A stretch of DNA of 64,000 nt from Ascidiella aspersa (Eukaryota), in assembly GCA_963924565.1 (NCBI GenBank), contig OZ004613.1:12896001-12960000 (forward strand), read 5' to 3'. Shown here piece by piece: positions 1 through 56,400 of the stretch. How positions within the stretch are numbered: position 1 is the stretch's first letter; each line of letters opens with the position of its first letter. Below the pieces are notes generated by a model. The model was not told the origin of the DNA. It worked only from the letters and a program-made list of their open reading frames with translations, and did no database searches. Position numbers and translations under genes: made by a program.

Positions 1-230
1 GTGTTAGAAAATTTAGAACTAACACAATTACTGTTACTTGATGTTAAAACCAGTATTGTAAATTCTGCACGGATCTGTAATGTATAGCTTAATAATAAAT
101 TGCAAAGCCAAAAAGGATGAATATCTTAATCAAGATGATGTAGATCTACTTGACCTTTTTGGCTTTGCAATTTATTGTCAAGTATTGTAAAAGTTCCCAA
201 AAAAATGTCACCCTCTAACGATTGGTGTAC

Positions 231-496
231 CTTTGCATTTTGAACCCAATTATATGCAAAGGAATAGGCTTTTCCGTAAACATGAGGATTAAATGTATTT
301 CGCCGACTGCTAAAAAATACAAAGTCGTTGTCGCTGCTAGAGAAGTAACTAGCCACTGTGAAAGAATGAGAAACATCTGTGACGTTGATCCAGGCGCAAG
401 TCGTGGCTGCTTTGAGACTAGGAACGTAACCTCGATACCAGACATAATCCAGGACCTGGCGTTTACGTGGAAACGTGAAGGTGATTGAAGGACAAA
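231..496 (-). CDS. Collagen-pentraxin exon 4 (N-half of pentraxin domain)
   Basis: Boundaries ttttgctgtacag|...AAG|GTACAC. Lies inside ORF 126..512. Pentraxin-like motifs FTFP, DYV, ATTCAW, ASY, SDND. Confidence 0.82.
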
Positions 497-1888
497 CTGT
501 ACAGCAAAACACAATTTTTTTATATGGTCATCTAGAGAAAAAGTTATGTAAAGCATTTAGCTGTTAAAAATATTGGTAATATTTCAACCATTGAAAAAAA
601 ACGAATGCAATACCTTTATGCTTATATAAATCCAAGACAATTTGTATTCGTCCATGTAGGCCTACTACTTTTAACTATAGTGTTCAAACACTTATGCTAC
701 TATGCTGCATTTTCAGACAAAATACAGTAAGGTATAGGTAAAACAGCTACCTGCACTGCGTTGATCTTGAAGCGATTTAAGCTGTGCTTTGAGAACCGCC
801 ACATCCTTTTCCAATCCGGAAACATTCAAAACGGTTACATCTACAATAGAGGTTAAAACATTATTTTATAATGAAAAAGCAACTATTTAAACCTAATGAG
901 TTACACACTAGGTGATAATTACCGTGAGATTAAAATACAAAACATCTGAATTACTTTTAACAAAGTAATACTTTTACAACATCTACAATTGGTTTTCCCT
1001 GGTATACGATATATTTAATTTCCATTAAACAACATATGTTGTTATATGAAATGTAATGTCTGTTAAAAATAATTTTCTCGCAGAAATAGGTTTAATTTGA
1101 ATTAGTAAAGGTTTTATTTTTATACAAATCAACCACAACGGGTTTGTAATATTTTCAATTTTGTATATTAAAAAAAAAATAACGGCTATAGCTAGTTTAG
1201 GCAGACTTTAAAATTGTTTTACCTGATTTATGCTTAAAAAACACAGGTTATATAATATTTATGGTATCAAACATGTTAATTCATATCCTTTTAAAGAACA
1301 GCTTTCAATCTGCTTAGAACGCGGTCAAATTACCTCCTGGTGGCCCGACTTTTCCCGGTGTTCCACGCTCACCTTTCTGTCCTCTCAAACCTTGAACACA
1401 AACGACAGTTAGGAAGTTTCTGTGTGTCTTGTCACTTGACTTCGAGAGTAACTTCCAAACGACTTATATTTTCTAGATAAGTCCCATGCTAACAATCTCA
1501 ACGTAAAGCATAGATCGTCAAAGCACTTTTAGAATTCCTTATTTACGTTTTTGAATGCCCACCTATTAGGCCCGTTGGTTATACCATAGTTTTACAACCA
1601 GTCTTGTATAGGCTACAACTATTTCTACCACACGAAAAAACAAAACAAATTGTCTCTATTATAATATGAAACCTTGTCAGCCCATTTAAATTGTAATGCT
1701 AATTTCAAGAACTGTATTGTCTTACCTCCTAGGTAGGCTTCTTGGCCTGGCAGATTCGACAGTGGGGCGCATATTTGAACTTGGCCGCCGCACGCTTGCT
1801 GCTGTTGTGGCGGAAAAACTGAAGGGTTTTGTTTGGCTTCGTGGCTTAGTGCCAGGAGTAAAGCAGTCAAGAGTACAATCTTACACAT
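231..1888 (-). CDS. Secreted collagen-neck-pentraxin protein (collectin-like layout), 3'-partial; exons 1888-1726, 1390-1334, 840-751, 496-231
   Basis: Four GT-AG exons with phases 1,1,1,0 join into MCKIVLLTALLLALSHEA(signal)KQNPSVFPPQQQQACGGQVQICAPLSNLPGQEAYLG|GLRGQKGERGTPGKVGPPG|DVTVLNVSGLEKDVAVLKAQLKSLQDQRSA|VCPSITFTFPRKRQVLDYVWYRGYVPSLKAATTCAWINVTDVSHSFTVASYFSSSDNDFVFF... The last part matches the pentraxin N-half pattern F.FP...DYV...P.L.A.T.C.W...T..SY...DN(E/D). Confidence 0.85.
751..840 (-). CDS. Collagen-pentraxin exon 3 (coiled-coil neck)
   Basis: Boundaries ctattgtag|...|GTAGCT, 90 nt. Heptad pattern VSGLEKDVAVLKAQLKSLQ. Confidence 0.85.
1334..1390 (-). CDS. Collagen-pentraxin exon 2 (Gly-X-Y repeat)
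   Basis: Boundaries tgtgttcaag|...|GTAATT, 57 nt. Encodes GLR GQK GER GTP GKV GPP G. Confidence 0.88.
1726..1888 (-). CDS. Collagen-pentraxin exon 1 (signal peptide, Cys pair)
   Basis: ATG at 1888, hydrophobic core IVLLTALLLAL, donor G|GTAAGA at 1725. Confidence 0.85.
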
Positions 1889-2933
1889 TGCTTCTATATT
1901 TTATTCAAATAAAATTTCTTAATAATTTTCCTGAACAAACCTCGAAATACTTGAGAAATAAATAATAGGATCAACAAATCAATACTTTGAGTTTCGCTTA
2001 TTTTAACCGCTCGTCAACTGTAAGTAGCAATAGGATGAAAGAAAATGTTAAAATTTTAACGCAGGATATATGATGACTACTAACAGCAATTCTAAACCAA
2101 AAAAGGTTTCATCGTTTACGGGGTGACTTGTTCGTTTTTGTATAAACTCCTTTAACCGCGCTTAAACTTGTACAGTAAATATAATCTGTTAGTTGCCACT
2201 GCGCATGATAAAGACCTAAGTGTGCAGCTGTTAAATCTTCAACAGCACAAGTCGAGCCCCATTCTGTCACGAGTTTTTATCTACACAAACAAAGATGTAA
2301 TGAACCCGGAAATGCATTTATGACGCATACTGTTGCCCTAAGGGAGGTTTGCGCCGTTCCTAAGCAAACAAGCCAACGTATTTCCTGCAGTTGCTGTCAA
2401 GCACGGAGACTTAAAACAGAGTTTAAATGTCATGACAGCCATATGCGGCGAGAAAATATTGATAAATTTCAACGCCTTTTCAATTTCATTTAAATCCTAC
2501 AGGTTTTCTATTTTTATTGGCCATAAATAGTTCAGCTTAAGAAAATTTACCTCACTGTTGGATTCAGGCCAAACACATCAGTGGCGGCTTAGGCCTAATT
2601 GCAATTGCCTTTATCCCAGTTTTGTATGGCAAAAGTCTTTTTGTTAAAAAGGGACATGGTTCTAAAACTTTTTGGCCAAAGAAAAAATACGTTACAATTT
2701 AGCCCAAAAAATTAGTTATAAAAGTCTTCTGTTTGCAGAGGCCTTTTCTCGGCGCTTTTAACATAGCAAAATGCTGAAATATTTTACTGACGTGATTTAA
2801 AGTACTATGGGATGTGCGCAAAGCTACATATTTTTTGTTCTGTCATAAAGTAGCCTATACTTTTAAAAACGTGTGTTCACGTTTTTTCTGTACTGCACAT
2901 TTTTTTCAGTAGCCCTATTTAAATACCGTTACC

Positions 2934-3291
2934 TAGTTTTGTAGTGACTTACGACAATCAGTTTCAAATGACTTAACTTAACTAAAGTCTTTCGGTCAAA
3001 ATGACTTGACTGAAGTATTTTGGACAAATAACTCATTTCCTTGCTATATGAGGGTTCTTGGCTATTATTTAGTTGAGTTATTGATCATAATCGGATTAGA
3101 TCAGTTTACCAATTTTAATAGCTTAACGTTTAATTTTTATGACAATAATTTGAATCGAAATCGACTTGCTCTAATTATGACTTGACTGAGACTTGATTGA
3201 TTATTTGTTTAAAATGACTTGAACTTAAGTTATTTTACAAAGGACTTGACTGGGACTTTTGTCATTTCAAAATGACTTGTTTACAATACTG
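2934..3291. mobile_element. hAT-type MITE with multiple GACTTGA subterminal repeats
   Basis: Ends TAGTTTTGTA...TTTACAATACTG. Flanks ccgttacc/ctgttacc are a 7/8 TSD match. Same family as 47620-48107 in the opposite orientation. Confidence 0.75.
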
Positions 3292-45100: not shown

Positions 45101-48100
45101 TTATAACACAAGGCCGCGTGAGAATAATAATTTTTTTATAGGACCGGGTTAAAATAGGATTGAAATACACATAATATAAAGTGTGATTACTTAAAACAAA
45201 GCTGTAAAAAAGCATTATTTTCGTAAGCTGGTACGAGTGTGGGAAACGTGAGACTGTTTTACAAATAGTTAATAGTGTAATATATTCAACAACACATTCT
45301 CAAGATCACATATAGAAAGAACTATTTTTCCTTGAACAATAATTTTTAAAAATAAGCTGCGTACCAAATTAAATTCGGCCCTGGTAGTTCAGGTTTAAAT
45401 CTACGAATTTCCTATTAAAAATTCATAAATTTCGCGCATAAAAAGTACCGCCTGTATATTTTTAAGCGTGCATAATTTAGAGTACACAAATTAACTTGGA
45501 AACCGTAAACCGTAAAGAAGCAGTCACAACGTTTAAACGCGTTCTTTCGGCCGCATTCTCAGCCTTCAAGATAACAGGCGAGGTAATATATTGCCAAAAA
45601 CATATTTGCGGCCGAGGCGGCAATATTATCGCATTGCGGTCGTTGCGCTACAATCGTTTGATTGGCGGTAACTCACGCCAGTAAATTCTGGGAAAAAGTA
45701 TCGACTAGAAAGGCAGGACGCCGGTCAAGGTGGACCAGGCGGTCTTAGTAGGTCCGGACATGAGTCGAGCAAGCGTGCGAACAACTATTCTTCGGCCGCC
45801 ACTTTTATCGACATCTGTGTCATGTTTCAAAGGTCAACGTGCGCGTTTCGGCGAAAGCGAGCATAAACCGCAGCCATTGCTGCACAGCTAGCCGCTAACG
45901 GCCTGAAAAGGTCTGTTTACTTCGAACACTCCCTTTCTCAATCATGCTCTTGTGCTTTATTCCACACAAATGCACGTTTATATTAGCAACTCACTTTTAT
46001 TAAAAATATAGCCTTTATTGGCCCGTTGTGAGGAATTTTAATCCTAAGAAACAACACTTTTTTTTGTTGTTCTCTAAATGATTTTTAATATGTTACTGCT
46101 TGGTTTTGTGTACTAATTTGCACAAAAATGGGAGTTAACATTTAAAATAGCTGACGGTCTTGCTTCAACGGCCTTCGTTAAAACAAAATGTCAAGTAAGC
46201 TGGTCAACAAATTCTACAGAACACAATTTGCGGTCCCTTCCCATTGGGAAACAATTTGGGAACAAATTAAAGTTGAATTAGACTGCGACAAAGCTGCAGT
46301 TCTTATGAATTAAAGTTGAATTAGACTGCGACAAAGCTGCAGTTTCTCTAATCAAATGTGACGGCACCATGCTTAAATAGCCGAAATCCGGATAAAGGCA
46401 AGCAAATTATTATCGACGACAAGATTTGTTTTCGTCCAATATTGCGTTCGATAAGGGTATAAGCCCGACATACGTGCAACGAACGTGAAACGACGAAACT
46501 GGTCTAAATATAGAATTCCTAATTGCCGACATTTCAAAAAACGAGATAGCGTTGCAAAAGTAAACACAAATTTGTAAAAAGCAATTGGTCAGTCCAGAAA
46601 ACACCATTTGGAATACCAAATCGACAATTCAGATGTGTCAATGCGGCAAGCGTGTGCGTTCAACTTTTTAAGAATAACAATCGTTAGAGATTTTCATCAC
46701 ATTTTTTAAGTTAGTCGTTGATTCCAACTAACAGTTTAATAAGTCATTACAGGCCATGTACTTCACGTATTTCAGCAACAAACCACCACCAGATCATATT
46801 GGTCTTTACTATGTACAAGAAGAGGCTATACTCACCAATGCAAAGATCGGACACGCTCAGGTGAATGATGAACCAATACATCGGCCTGAAAAAGCGAGAG
46901 TTCCCGCATACGATGGCCTGAATGACCAGACAGTTGCCCACGATGATTGCCAGCGAAACCAGTCCGGCAGTTATGATGAGCGGGAGCGATTCGAGCGGCT
47001 TACAAAACTCAACCTGCAATGAAGACGGACTGTCGTTGGTATTTAGCTTGGCGCAATTCGATAGTGGACCGATTTACGTAGTTTACGCATCGGAAGAGGT
47101 AAATGTCACGCAAATACATCGACCTATATACCGTTTCTCCATCGCGGTTTAGCTAAGGCGTGTTTCTAACTAGTCAACCTGATAATAATTTTATTTTGCT
47201 CTAGTTAGTATTGTAAGACTATGCTAGTGAAATAGTAGATAAATGAGTAGAAACAGGACAACTTATATCAAATTACGATAGAAGTAAATTTTGAATCCTC
47301 GCAGGGTCTACTTGTTTTTGTGATTTTCCATTGTTTATAAATTGTGTCCTGTGATATTGATAAATATTGGCAAATGGCTAATTCAGCAAGTGTTGGCGCG
47401 CACGTCAGAGGAATGACTAGTACTACTCGTTGCTCATTAAGTGATGTCGATATTTGCAAGAGCTATTCGCACAGCACAAGAAATACTGGTAAAACAAGCG
47501 GGTCCAAATAAAGCTTGTTCGGGTGCACTAGAAATACTTGCAAAACCTGGTTTAAAGGAAGCATAATTCCCATGACAACTCGGCATTCCAACCACTCCGC
47601 AATGCGACCAACTAAACAAAAGTGTTGTAAATAAGTTATTCCAAATGACTCAAGTCCAAGTCAAGTCATTTGTAAAATAACTAATCAAATTCAAGTGTTT
47701 TGCAAAAAGTAACAAGTCAAGTCCCAGCCCAAGTCACCAGTTACCCAAGTCCAAGTCACGCCATCAGTAAAGCAAGTGAACTTCAAGTCAAGTCATTGAC
47801 ATAAAAATAAAGCGCAAATCATTTAAAATGGGTAAACTCGTCCGACTATAATCCTATATGAATCATATCTCAACAGATATAACAAAAATGCAATATACAG
47901 CAAGCAAATTGTTTTATCTAAAAAATTTGAAATTAATATCCCAATTTTATTAACAAATATTTATTAACAAAACTTGTTAATAAATATCATTTTAACCCAA
48001 GTTATTTGACACAATGACTTACGTCAAAGTCAAGTCATTTGTCCAAAAGACTTAAGTGAAGTCACGTCATTTGAAAACAGTGACTTAAGTGCACCTTTAC

Positions 48101-53489: not shown

Positions 53490-56400
53490 GTAATTATTTT
53501 GTTTTTTTCGTTTCCTTAAACCTCATTTAAATTATATTTACGCAATTGAACATTTAGCTGTATCGTTTTATTAAATGTTTTATTTATTTGTTATGAACGT
53601 TTTGTAGATTATGATTTTGGAGGGGTTCATTTGACCGAACCATGTTATTATAAAATGTATATACCTAGTTATTAATTAGTGTTTCCAAAGCAAAAGGAAT
53701 TCATTTGTATTTTCAAAACTTTTACATATTTGGCCTTGTCGACCAAAATAAAAAGGAATTTTAAGTACGGGTAGTAGGGATGTTCAGATTTAACTTTTTT
53801 TTGAAAATTTATGCTTCCTGCTTGATTTCCCATTATGTGTCACATAAAAATCAGTTTCACAAGTTTTCAAAACAATTGGACAACATTTAGGGGCTCGGCA
53901 CCCCAAAGTTATCACACTAAAATTGCTAAAATCCGGGACTTCCCGTAACACGATACTGTACGTTTTTCTTTAAAAACAAAGAAACCTTGTAATTTTTATA
54001 TTAAACAATGGAAAGAAAGCATCACTAATCTATTTCCCAGTTTTATGTAACTTAAAAAGTATTCTTAAAGCCCCCAAAGCCCTACTTTACCCCATTTTTA
54101 GAGTTGTCATTTGATTTATCACATATATTCAATAAAATACATTTTATCGAATTATTTAAAACCTGTTTATGATCGCCTGTGATCTTCAACAGCCTGTAGC
54201 AAGCTTGCAAGTTGCTGAGGATTGTCATTTAAGCATAATCAGTGATTAATATTTTTAACAAACACATGGTCAGCATGATCATGGAACTTGTCCATAATCG
54301 CAGCTTTGTTTAAGACAAACAACGGCTCCATCAAAGCAGGTTATGACGCCTTAGAAACGGCATGCCTCAGGGATTAGTCCTGGCTCCTTTGCTGTTTAAT
54401 GTTTATTACAGTGATCTGCCCGCCACAGTCTCCAAGCATACGCTGATGACTTGGCGATCTTGCATGCTGAAGGGAATTGGCGCAGTGTTGAGAGGACTCT
54501 TAGTCCACCTCAATAACAAGGAAATTAAACGTGTGTTGTCCGTCAATACCAATGGAAGAACTTTTGGATTTCCATGTCTACATACCTCGCATTGCATCTG
54601 GACAGGACACTCACACCCCAGAGGAGCCACAATACCAAAGGGTACTATCCTCGAGATGCTCCTTTGTACCAGCTGCACTCAAATCACTGCAGAAATGTGA
54701 AAGCTCTGGTGTAGGTGAATGGATGGCCACCAAATGGAACGAGGAGCAATATTACCCCTCTCCACCACTATTGCCCCACCACCTCCAATAAGCCTTAGGG
54801 TTTTGGCCTGTCTATTCGAGCCTAGACTCGCCTTAACAGGCTGAGAACAGGGGTCGGTCGTGCTAGGTCTTCCATGAATAAATGGGGCTTCTGTGACTGT
54901 GGTTTGGAGGAACAGACTGCAGATCACATAGTCTCACGGTGCCGATATATCGCCAACCAAGTGGGACAAATGGTCTGACACTCTTGGACGATGAGACTAT
55001 TCGCTGGCATCTCGACTTCTGCCCGGACATTTGAACTGGAATAATAAGATCGTCCATACGAAAGAAGAAGACGATCAAGCAGGTGCAACGCACAGTACAA
55101 AGTGGATGGGACAAGTTTTCTATGGCCAGAAATGTTTATGTGGTCTGAACAGATGGGTAATGATGCTATTTTTCTAGACAAACTTGTCACATTTTCCTTG
55201 TTTAGTAATCACCCACAAATCACCAAGGACACAAAGGCAGCAATTGCCCGAAAACTTCTTGCAAACCTGAAGATTTTCACCAAGGCATTCAAGTTTTGCA
55301 TCATAAAATCAAAAGTTATACCACTTTAAAGGAGTTGATTGGCACAGATTCCTGCTTTATTTTACGCTACTCAATCAGATATGTGATTGGCCGACGCATT
55401 CTCCCGATTCATGGTGCTCATAATACAAACGAGTTAAGGTCTTCATGTACTGTTACAGTTGTGAATGATGCCGCAGAAAGAGGGGTTAAAAGTAAACACA
55501 GATTGTGCTGCTATATTAACCGACAATCCACAGCAACAAACAACTTGCTACAAGCTGTTGAAGATCACAGGCAATCATACCCAGATTTTCTAAAAAAAAC
55601 CTTGGCTAAAAAATAATAAAAGCTATTCATTGATGTTCCTTTTTACATTTTTTAACTATTACATTGGTATACTTTTGCTATATTCCTTCTTTATTCACTG
55701 TTGATTAAAATACTTTGCTTTTCATAATATACAATTTGTTAAAATATATTTTATTGTACATATTTGAATTAAATGACAGCTCCAAAAATGGGGTAAAGTG
55801 GGAATTTTGGGGCTTCAAGAATACATTTTAAGTTATATAAAACTGGAAAATAGATTAGTGATGCTTTCTTGCCATTGTTTAATATAAAAATTTCAAAGTT
55901 AAATCTGAACAACCCTAACGGGTAGGCCTACTTGTTTTAAAGACACTTGTTAAAAGAGCTAAAATTTGTCTAACAAACTTGCTAAACTTATAATTGTGTA
56001 TCTCACTTAGTGTGCACTGCGAAAGTGGGCTGCGCGTTATAGATTCACTCTCACGCCATCTTATGCAAAATTATTATATTTAGCCTAAAAAGGATTCTTG
56101 GCATTAGTACTTGGCGCTGCCCTTTTTTCACGACAGCAATCAGTCAAGTCAAAAATTTTTGCCAGTCATAACTTCTTGTGACGAGAACGTCCGATAGTTT
56201 GGAATTTAATACTGCGATCTACTGCGATCTATTTTGCTAAAAACCATAGTCGTTTGACGAAATGCCATATGATGCGCCATTATTAAAGTCGAAATGCCAA
56301 AAGTATTTGTTATAAATGCATAAAATCTAGTTGTGTTTAGATTTAGACCATTATTTCTTTGTAACGTTCAAGTGTTAAAGTTGCTATGGTATGAAAAAAT

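What the first reader, a model, noticed from the sequence alone, without database searches (positions are those of the whole stretch)
231..1888. Collectin/ficolin-style defence collagen with a pentraxin head
Seen: one module per exon with phase-1 introns - signal peptide plus Cys pair (QACGGQVQIC), 6-7 Gly-X-Y triplets, a heptad neck, then a pentraxin-like domain that keeps the first Cys (ATTCAW) and a DN pair matching the Ca2+-ligating DN of CRP/SAP. Known: collectins end in a C-type lectin domain, ficolins in a fibrinogen domain and C1q in gC1q, while classical pentraxins form pentamers without collagen. The segment GTPGKVGP matches the P-G-K-x-G-P MASP-binding motif of MBL and ficolins. Inference: this is a trimeric pattern-recognition molecule that could couple pentraxin-type recognition directly to MASP/lectin-pathway complement. 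It was probably built by phase-1 exon shuffling.
Basis: partly seen in the sequence, partly recalled or inferred. Interest (0 to 1): 0.8.

Follow-up and report, generated by a model that had tools for sequence, protein, structure and literature searches.

The report
Collagen-stalked pentraxin gene of a tunicate
This is a real, expressed gene for a secreted protein built like a collectin (cysteine-rich start, short collagen stalk, coiled-coil neck) but ending in a pentraxin head; related predicted proteins exist in other sea squirts, no description of them was found, and it could represent a fourth type of "defence collagen".

Summary
On the minus strand, window 1945..231 carries four GT-AG exons. 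They encode a signal peptide with a Cys pair, seven Gly-X-Y triplets including PGKVGP, a three-heptad neck, and the first 88 residues of a pentraxin domain. Two further exons just left of the window complete the domain, with the second Cys and the EQD..E..Q calcium ligands of CRP. One spliced 1156-nt contig from a public run joins all six exons with no mismatch, giving a 310-aa protein. Stranded RNA reads from another study lie on the same exons. The same architecture occurs in predicted proteins of Ciona intestinalis and Clavelina lepadiformis. It also occurs on three anonymous ~1-kb contigs and in three intact paralogues on contig 5. Databases label these only as pentraxins, because the collagen run scores below Pfam's cut-off. 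A three-copy model of the Ciona orthologue gives a staggered collagen helix plus coiled coil (score 0.48, best control 0.00). G-K-x-G-P is present in every orthologue, but chance gives it in 12-44% of composition-matched shuffles. MASP binding is untested. Verdict: a new variant of known kinds, a long pentraxin on a collectin-type scaffold. The lectin-pathway link is plausible but unproven.

The parts
1726..1945 (-). Exon 1: 57-nt 5' UTR (1945..1889), start codon at 1888, signal peptide, Cys-containing N-terminal segment; donor GGAG|gtaag, phase 1
   Evidence: Sequence and translation. Piece 3924-4145 of L010 in spliced contig 'record 9' of run X3.
1829..1888 (-). Probable signal peptide MCKIVLLTALLLALSHEAKQ (hydrophobic core LLTALLLAL)
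   Evidence: Translation. Read from the sequence; no signal-peptide predictor was available.
1769..1792 (-). N-terminal Cys pair CGGQVQIC. The QVQICAP motif is shared with the Ciona orthologue and all contig-5 paralogues. It is a candidate site for inter-chain disulfides.
1334..1390 (-). Exon 2: 57-nt phase 1-1 collagen cassette, GLR GQK GER GTP GKV GPP G
   Evidence: Cassettes of similar size (about 54-57 nt as located by tblastn and a Gly-X-Y scan) in three contig-5 paralogues. A Ciona isoform lacks exactly 19 aa here.
1341..1358 (-). [quoted passage not shown]
   Evidence: Motif definition from PMC2856262. G-K-x-G-P present in all orthologues.
751..840 (-). Exon 3: 90-nt phase 1-1 neck with three heptads (a/d = V,L,V,L,L,L) and an N-V-S glycosylation site
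   Evidence: In the model of the Ciona orthologue the neck forms the three-chain interface.
231..496 (-). Exon 4: first 88 residues of the pentraxin domain. Holds the family Cys (VCPS), the canonical first Cys (ATTCAW, 398..396) and the D-N calcium ligands (332..327). Donor AAAG|gtacac, phase 0.
   Evidence: Pfam PF00354 positions 3-73, E 0.0044. Family-profile alignment to CRP 1b09 puts D-N on Asp60-Asn61. Spliced contig. The last two exons lie outside the window at G000:C7:12895715-12895896 and 12894025-12894364.

Best explanation
The locus encodes a 310-residue secreted protein in which a pentraxin head is carried on a collectin-type scaffold.

Proposed mechanism:
- The three-heptad neck nucleates a three-stranded coiled coil.
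- That coiled coil zips the seven adjacent Gly-X-Y triplets into a short triple helix.
- The two N-terminal cysteines then lock the chains together, and possibly link trimers into larger bouquets.
- The three pentraxin heads bind ligands through a CRP-type double calcium site.
- The protein therefore acts as a multivalent soluble recognition or opsonin-type molecule of a tunicate.

Shown: gene structure, splicing, transcription from the minus strand, domain order, presence of the disulfide cysteines and all calcium ligands, and conservation of the architecture in other tunicates.

Inferred: secretion, trimerisation, calcium-dependent ligand binding, and an immune rather than neural or matrix role.
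For: - A spliced contig joins all six exons with 0 mismatches, and stranded RNA reads of a second study lie on the exons with the first mate on + only.
- The joined frame is open for 310 codons (local frame check only).
- Pfam Pentaxin matches exons 4-6 in order.
- A family profile hits neuronal pentraxin-2 (4e-26), neuronal pentraxin-1 (4.5e-25), CRP (1.3e-23), SAP and PTX3.
- Exon 5 aligns with CRP so that Cys97, Glu138-Gln139-Asp140, Glu147 and Gln150 are kept. D-N aligns with Asp60-Asn61.
- The same architecture occurs in Ciona XP_002121231 and F6Z4Q2, Clavelina XP_076805675, three anonymous contigs and three intact paralogues.
- Three copies of the Ciona orthologue (residues 57-310) scored 0.48 (runs 0.48, 0.25, 0.51) against a best control of 0.00. 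Partner pLDDT was 84 and at least 85% of contacts agreed between runs. In calibration this mark was reached by 21 of 30 proteins solved as pairs of one chain and by 0 of 23 solved as single chains; on eukaryotes the figures were 17 of 29 and 0 of 30, and the job differs from the calibration in having three copies. The interface is the collagen run 59-82 with a one-residue stagger, plus neck positions 88-103.
- Tandem duplication with decayed copies is the birth-and-death pattern usual for recognition genes.
Against: - Seven triplets is far shorter than the stalks of MBL, ficolins or C1q, and helix stability is unknown.
- The complex model is of the Ciona protein, not the window's. It could reflect the model's memory of collagen and coiled-coil folds.
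- A Clavelina member has no neck, a Ciona isoform skips the collagen cassette, and a paralogue at C5:6.48 Mb has no collagen exon. So the stalk is dispensable for at least some family members.
- There are no tissue, induction or binding data.
- The closest solved heads include neuronal pentraxins, which are not immune molecules.
Confidence: 0.6

Rival explanations
1. One reading: on top of the above, the Lys of PGKVGP docks the calcium site of a CUB domain of a tunicate MASP. Pentraxin-type recognition would then directly trigger the lectin pathway, making this a complement-activating defence collagen with a pentraxin head.
For: - The window sequence matches Hyp-Gly-Lys-Xaa(aliphatic)-Gly-Pro exactly.
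- The paper states that specificity is driven mainly by the single Lys, that three substitutions suffice to give SP-A MASP binding, and that binding tolerates shifts of the motif along the stalk (PMC2856262).
- G-K-x-G-P is present in all six orthologues examined and in one further paralogue, although its position in the 19-codon cassette differs between this species and Ciona.
- The N-terminal Cys pair could give the multi-stalk oligomers that MASP dimers need.
- MASPs, MBL-like lectins, ficolins and C3 are widely reported in ascidians (review PMC5465252).
Against:
- Shuffling X and Y residues within each stalk gives G-K-x-G-P in 12-44% of trials, and the orthologues are not independent.
- The motif is lost in paralogue L015a (GRNGS) and degraded in L015b (GKDGR).
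- The Lys sits only two triplets from the neck on a stalk of about 6 nm, which may leave too little room for a CUB domain.
- The collagen cassette is skipped in a Ciona isoform.
Confidence: 0.28
2. It is the tunicate counterpart of neuronal or long pentraxins: a synaptic or matrix organiser whose N-terminal oligomerisation region happens to include a few Gly-X-Y triplets, with no role in defence.
For: - The best solved relatives of the head are neuronal pentraxin-2 and -1.
- NCBI names the Ciona proteins 'neuronal pentraxin-2-like'.
- The plan of coiled-coil N-terminus plus C-terminal pentraxin domain is the long-pentraxin plan.
- Extra Cys at both ends of the domain recall long pentraxins (my own knowledge of PTX3, not tested here).
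Against: - CRP scores almost as well (1.3e-23 against 4e-26), so the head is roughly equidistant from short and long pentraxins.
- All CRP calcium ligands are kept.
- At least four intact and several decayed copies in one genome are unusual for a synaptic organiser.
- Database names come from automatic best hits.
Confidence: 0.18
3. The Gly-X-Y run is too short to form a triple helix and is only a flexible Gly/Pro-rich linker. Oligomerisation rests on the coiled coil and disulfides alone, so the protein is an ordinary long pentraxin and the collectin likeness is superficial.
For: - There are only 6-7 triplets.
- Pfam Collagen scores 15-18 bits against a cut-off of 27.2 in the orthologues.
- The cassette is optional in Ciona and absent from one paralogue.
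Against: - Perfect Gly periodicity is kept in nine of the ten stalks examined (the exception is an interruption just after the sixth triplet in L015a/b) despite heavy sequence divergence, and the 57-nt cassette size inferred for Ciona matches the window's.
- The model gives a staggered three-chain helix exactly over this run.
- A neck directly C-terminal to the run is the arrangement that nucleates collagen folding in collectins (established knowledge).
Confidence: 0.2

Closest known systems
Collectins (MBL, SP-A, SP-D, CL-K1)
   Same: The module order is the same: signal peptide, short Cys-containing N-terminus, Gly-X-Y stalk, alpha-helical coiled-coil neck, C-terminal calcium-dependent recognition head. 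The neck is on its own exon. The sequence matches the MBL MASP-binding hexapeptide.
   Different: The head is a pentraxin domain, not a C-type lectin domain. The stalk has 7 triplets instead of roughly 20-60. No kink is present.
Long pentraxins (neuronal pentraxins 1 and 2, PTX3)
   Same: The plan is a C-terminal pentraxin domain preceded by an N-terminal coiled-coil oligomerisation region. These are the best-scoring solved heads. Additional Cys lie at the domain ends.
   Different: The N-terminal region here is only about 104 residues, and it contains a Gly-X-Y triple-helix cassette and a collectin-like neck. To my knowledge no collagen segment is described in vertebrate long pentraxins.
Short pentraxins (CRP, SAP, Limulus SAP-like pentraxin)
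   Same: The canonical disulfide pair is present. All calcium ligands are kept (Asp60, Asn61, Glu138, Gln139, Asp140, Glu147, Gln150 equivalents).
   Different: Short pentraxins have no N-terminal extension and form flat pentamers or larger rings, whereas here a three-chain stalk would impose threefold symmetry. The H-x-C-x-[ST]-W signature is one residue short (HMCMW).
Ficolins and C1q (the other defence collagens)
   Same: Both have a Cys-rich start plus a collagen stalk plus a globular recognition head, with a Lys-containing protease-binding motif in the stalk.
   Different: Their heads are fibrinogen-like or gC1q domains. Their stalks are longer, and they lack a collectin-type neck.
Predicted tunicate proteins: Ciona intestinalis XP_002121231 / F6Z4Q2, Clavelina lepadiformis XP_076805675
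   Same: These are true homologues at 36-38% identity over exon 4. The QVQICAP N-terminal motif, a collagen run of 7-8 triplets with G-K-x-G-P and the family-specific pentraxin features (CP..F.FPR, WPRVL, C.CP, C-terminal CP) are shared with the Ciona protein; the Clavelina protein shares the collagen run and pentraxin features but not the QVQICAP motif.
   Different: They are only automatic predictions named SAP-like, CRP-like or neuronal pentraxin-2-like, with no collagen annotation. The Clavelina protein lacks the neck. The Lys motif sits at a different triplet.

Membership tests
Pentraxin family (Pfam PF00354) | Sequence match to the pentraxin domain profile over its whole length | tested here: met
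   Exons 4, 5 and 6 match profile positions 3-73, 88-144 and 143-190 of 194, in order. Exon 5 alone scores 28 bits against a cut-off of 25. The family profile hits CRP, SAP, NPTX1/2 and PTX3 at 1e-18 to 4e-26.
Pentraxin family (Pfam PF00354) | Conserved intrachain disulfide pair (CRP Cys36-Cys97) | tested here: met
   ATTCAW lies in exon 4. HMCMW in exon 5 aligns to CRP Cys97.
Pentraxin family (Pfam PF00354) | Pentraxin signature H-x-C-x-[ST]-W-x-[ST] | tested here: inconclusive
   The sequence is V-H-M-C-M-W-F-D-A-E-S. His, Cys and Trp are present but the [ST] before Trp is missing. The same deviation (H.C.WF[SD]) is found in all family members.
Pentraxin family (Pfam PF00354) | Calcium-ligating residues of CRP/SAP | tested here: met
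   D-N (window 332..327), E-Q-D, E and Q align with CRP 60, 61, 138-140, 147 and 150. Actual calcium binding was not tested.
Collectins | C-terminal C-type lectin carbohydrate-recognition domain | tested here: not met
   The head is a pentraxin domain, and no C-type lectin match appears in any exon. The protein is therefore not a collectin, although it is built like one.
Collectins | N-terminal Cys segment, Gly-X-Y collagen region, alpha-helical coiled-coil neck, in that order | tested here: met
   Sequence and exon order. In the model of the Ciona orthologue the three-chain interface falls on the collagen run and neck. Pfam Collagen is below its cut-off in the orthologues (15-18 bits against 27.2) because the run is short.
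Complement-activating defence collagens (MBL, ficolins, C1q) | [quoted passage not shown] | tested here: met
   P-G-K-V-G-P at 1358..1341. Motif as defined in PMC2856262. Prolyl hydroxylation is not testable here.
Complement-activating defence collagens (MBL, ficolins, C1q) | Physical binding and activation of a MASP / C1r-C1s type protease | not testable with these tools
   No MASP sequence of this species was in hand. The co-location search of CUB, Sushi and Trypsin matches was inconclusive.
Long pentraxins | Pentraxin domain preceded by a long unrelated N-terminal region that forms coiled coils and inter-chain disulfides | tested here: inconclusive
   The N-terminal region of 104 residues has a coiled-coil neck and two Cys, but it is shorter than in PTX3 or the neuronal pentraxins and contains a collagen cassette. 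No phylogeny was made.

The most novel reading that the evidence does not exclude
Tunicates possess a fourth class of complement-activating defence collagen whose head is a pentraxin. Its conserved stalk lysine would recruit MASP, so that pentraxin-type calcium-dependent recognition feeds straight into the lectin pathway without C1q. Inclusion of the 57-nt collagen cassette by alternative splicing would switch the protein between a complement-coupled and an uncoupled form.
Probability: 0.22. Interest if true: 0.85.

Novelty: new variant of a known kind. Interest (0 to 1): 0.6.

Why it matters
Three head types are known on defence-collagen scaffolds: C-type lectin, fibrinogen-like and gC1q. In vertebrates, pentraxins reach complement only indirectly, through C1q or ficolins. 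A pentraxin head mounted directly on a collectin-type stalk, in the sister group of vertebrates, would be a fourth solution. It would also be a clear case of modular exon shuffling, since the collagen and neck exons are phase 1-1 cassettes. If the stalk lysine binds MASP, it would show that the link between pentraxins and complement can be made within one polypeptide. It would also give a simple system for asking how short a collagen stalk can be and still activate a protease. The case exposes an annotation blind spot as well: collagen runs of 6-8 triplets fall below Pfam's cut-off, so such hybrids are filed as plain pentraxins.

Tried and rejected
1. Reading the ORF through window 231 down to 126. 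Rejected: the continuation runs into a MITE-like repeat with many genome copies, and the spliced contig leaves the exon at 231.

2. Finding a MASP in this genome by co-location of CUB, Trypsin and Sushi matches, then inspecting two candidate loci.
   - C5:23.45 Mb looks like CUB, a Cys-rich module, then trypsin.
   - C2:14.77 Mb looks like a membrane Sushi/CUB protein followed by a separate CUB-trypsin gene.
   - Neither is a clear CUB-EGF-CUB-CCP-CCP-protease. The question was left open; it is not evidence of absence.

3. Exon 4 alone against solved structures gave only a chance hit to riboflavin synthase. The family profile was needed.

4. NCBIfam gave nothing, as expected for a eukaryotic protein.

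5. The ESM Atlas with the whole Ciona protein gave only collagens with TSPN/LamG domains, at 135-146 shared features, which is below the level of true kin. With the head alone it gave plain pentraxin clusters, none listing Collagen.

6. Seven literature searches found no paper describing a collagen-pentraxin protein. The library lacks most subscription journals, so this is weak evidence of novelty.

7. Pfam on the nine longest other ORFs of the window found only a faint reverse-transcriptase trace.

8. The joined 310-aa model was assembled only inside a local script, to check frame and length. It was not sent to any search, fold or complex tool. All searches were run exon by exon by reference, and the complex model used the Ciona orthologue instead.

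Full report
WHAT IS THERE

The finding lies on the minus strand at the left edge of the window (window = G000:C7:12896001-12960000). Reading and translating the region gives four exons with canonical GT-AG borders.
- Exon 1, 1945..1726, has its ATG at 1888. It encodes a hydrophobic signal-like start, MCKIVLLTALLLALSHEAKQ, then CGGQVQIC, and ends in phase 1.
- Exon 2, 1390..1334, is 57 nt and phase 1-1. It encodes GLR GQK GER GTP GKV GPP G.
- Exon 3, 840..751, is 90 nt and phase 1-1. It encodes a three-heptad neck with an NVS site.
- Exon 4, 496..231, encodes the first 88 residues of a pentraxin-like domain, with ATTCAW and SDND.

Counting the triplet that straddles exons 2 and 3 there are seven Gly-X-Y triplets, and P-G-K-V-G-P sits at 1358..1341. 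The open frame that continues past 231 enters a palindromic MITE-like repeat (window 57-190) with more than 50 genome copies. It is intron, not coding sequence.

COMPLETING THE GENE

I fetched the DNA left of the window. Two more exons are there.
- Exon 5 (C7:12895715-12895896) begins VHMCMWFDAES and contains ILGQEQDAANAGGLEAGQSF.
- Exon 6 (C7:12894025-12894364) begins GTIGNFFMWPRVL and ends EECPVV, followed by the stop codon and the 3' UTR.

Pfam Pentaxin matches exons 4, 5 and 6 in order, at profile positions 3-73, 88-144 and 143-190 of 194. Exon 5 alone is above the curated cut-off.

Exon 5 aligns to human CRP with Cys97, Glu138-Gln139-Asp140, Glu147 and Gln150 conserved. A family profile aligns the D-N of exon 4 with Asp60-Asn61. 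The classical signature H-x-C-x-[ST]-W is one residue short (HMCMW). The whole family shares this deviation.

IS IT ONE TRANSCRIPT?

Yes. Laying public runs on the 4.4-kb locus shows one 1156-nt contig of run X3 that lies on the minus strand with no mismatch. It covers exactly six pieces, which equal the six exons once the two-base GT ambiguity at some junctions is allowed for. A contig that skips five GT-AG introns is cDNA.

A stranded RNA-seq run of another study (X5) puts reads on the exons with the first mate on the + strand only, as expected for a minus-strand RNA. Those reads differ by about 4% in exon 4. That is too close for the contig-5 paralogues (74-87% identity), so they most likely come from a divergent allele.

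Joined locally for a frame check only, the coding sequence is 933 nt, or 310 residues. Everything was searched exon by exon by reference.

RELATIVES

A full scan of 1.84 billion representative proteins with exon 4 found only 38 proteins at E <= 0.001, none above 49% identity. This species' own proteome is therefore not in the library, and this half of the head is subfamily-specific.

The full-length hits share the whole architecture.
- Ciona intestinalis XP_002121231 (310 aa) has QVQICAPMSN, GSRGKAGPKGEKGSRGPPGPE, the neck ELERLRNEIRQLK, and the pentraxin head.
- Ciona F6Z4Q2 is a second member.
- Clavelina lepadiformis XP_076805675 has eight triplets and no neck.
- Three anonymous ~1-kb contigs (P0035, P0048, P0049) encode the same plan.

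So the genome is almost certainly a tunicate, probably an ascidian. Sources name these proteins SAP-like, CRP-like or neuronal pentraxin-2-like. Pfam Collagen scores only 15-18 bits on them against a cut-off of 27.2, which explains why the collagen part is not annotated.

In this genome, contig 5 (25.81-25.98 Mb) holds three intact six-exon paralogues with a similar short collagen cassette, plus several decayed copies. A more distant paralogue at C5:6.48 Mb keeps the ...QICAP... start and a neck-like exon but has no Gly-X-Y exon.

Ciona isoform X2 equals isoform X1 minus exactly 19 residues of the collagen run. So the cassette is also 57 nt there and can apparently be skipped. They also show that the stalk is optional in the family.

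HOW IT PROBABLY WORKS

The module order is that of a collectin: signal peptide, Cys pair, Gly-X-Y, heptad neck, calcium-type recognition head.

Three copies of the Ciona orthologue (residues 57-310) gave a score of 0.48 (runs 0.48, 0.25, 0.51) against a best control of 0.00. Partner pLDDT was 84 and at least 85% of contacts agreed between runs. In calibration the mark was reached by 21 of 30 proteins solved as pairs of one chain and by 0 of 23 solved as single chains (on eukaryotes, 17 of 29 and 0 of 30). The job, with three copies, differs from that calibration.

The confident contacts are the collagen run 59-82, with the one-residue stagger of a triple helix, and neck positions 88, 92, 95, 99 and 102. 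This supports, but does not show, a trimer held by collagen plus coiled coil. It is a model of the orthologue and may draw on memory of known folds.

My best reading (confidence 0.6) is a secreted, trimer-based, possibly higher-order, calcium-dependent soluble recognition molecule. The tandem birth-and-death pattern favours a defence role over a synaptic one, but no tissue or induction data are in hand.

THE MASP QUESTION

[quoted passage not shown] The source paper states three relevant things (PMC2856262).
- The single lysine dominates specificity.
- Three substitutions confer MASP binding on SP-A.
- Binding tolerates moving the motif along the stalk.

G-K-x-G-P occurs in every orthologue and in one more paralogue. 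It is lost in one paralogue (GRNGS) and degraded in another (GKDGR). Its position within the cassette also differs between this species and Ciona.

Shuffling X and Y residues within each stalk yields the motif in 12-44% of trials. The conservation is therefore suggestive, not compelling. Ascidians are reported to have MASPs, MBL-like lectins, ficolins and C3 (PMC5465252), but I could not pin down a MASP in this genome. The stalk is about 6 nm long and the lysine lies two triplets from the neck, which may be tight for a CUB domain. I give the complement-coupling reading about 0.28.

COMPARISON AND NOVELTY

The head is about equally close to neuronal pentraxins, CRP, SAP and PTX3. Functionally, the nearest known plans are long pentraxins (coiled-coil N-terminus plus pentraxin head) and collectins (Cys, collagen, neck, head).
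- It fails the defining head test for collectins, ficolins and C1q.
- It passes the pentraxin domain tests except for the strict signature.

Seven literature searches and two Atlas look-ups found no description of a collagen-pentraxin protein. The search was limited, so this is weak evidence. Homologues already sit unrecognised in public protein sets.

I class it as a new variant of known kinds, with interest 0.6. An unchecked first-stage note on another piece of the same genome reports a collectin-like scaffold with a discoidin head (s1-787284). If that holds, this tunicate may mount several head types on such scaffolds. I did not test that.

Noticed in passing
window 57-190: Palindromic MITE-like repeat inside intron 4 of the gene, with more than 50 copies across the genome at 73-94% identity. 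It explains the spurious extension of the ORF past the exon 4 donor.
   Followed up: partly
L010 1030-1617 (G000:C7:12894830-12895417, intron 5, left of the window): Very high-copy repeat rich in CCGAGTCCGACTCC-like units. Word depth in the DNA-like run X1 is 12,000-220,000 against about 100 elsewhere.
   Followed up: no
G000:C5:25810001-25985000 (L011-L016): Tandem cluster of paralogues. Three are intact six-exon copies with a similar short collagen cassette (L013; two in L015/L016). Several decayed copies carry stops or frameshifts (L011, L012, L014).
   Followed up: partly
G000:C5:6477001-6487000 (L021): More distant family member with the ...ECGREMQICAPISSLP start, a neck-like exon (RKELDKAVKQLDQIATR) and pentraxin exons, but no Gly-X-Y exon. 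Further pentraxin loci of the same subfamily lie at C2:7.85, C2:32.19 and C5:29.10 Mb, and no collagen run of 5 or more triplets was found in the stretches fetched around them.
   Followed up: partly
Ciona intestinalis proteins P0039 and P0041 (XP_002121231.1, XP_026696465.1): Isoform X2 equals X1 minus exactly 19 residues of the collagen run. The collagen module is therefore a 57-nt cassette exon there too, and is annotated as alternatively skipped.
   Followed up: yes
L010 2429-2696 (window 229-496), run X5: All RNA reads of run X5 over exon 4 carry the same 11 or so differences from the assembly (about 4%). This is most likely a divergent allele in another individual, typical of highly polymorphic tunicates.
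   Followed up: no
window 54362-54700: ORF with a faint reverse-transcriptase (RVT_1) match, E 0.0095, below the cut-off. It is probably a decayed retroelement.
   Followed up: no
window 2940-3290 and 47998-48090: Short repeated units of the ATGACTTGA / GTCATTTGA type: a loose array upstream of the gene and a 33-bp tandem repeat of 2.8 copies. Meaning unknown.
   Followed up: no
G000:C2:14780001-14786000 (L020): Large mosaic gene with SUEL-lectin-like, Sushi, calcium-binding EGF and CUB exons followed by a transmembrane segment. A separate CUB-trypsin gene lies next to it. Seen while looking for a MASP.
   Followed up: no
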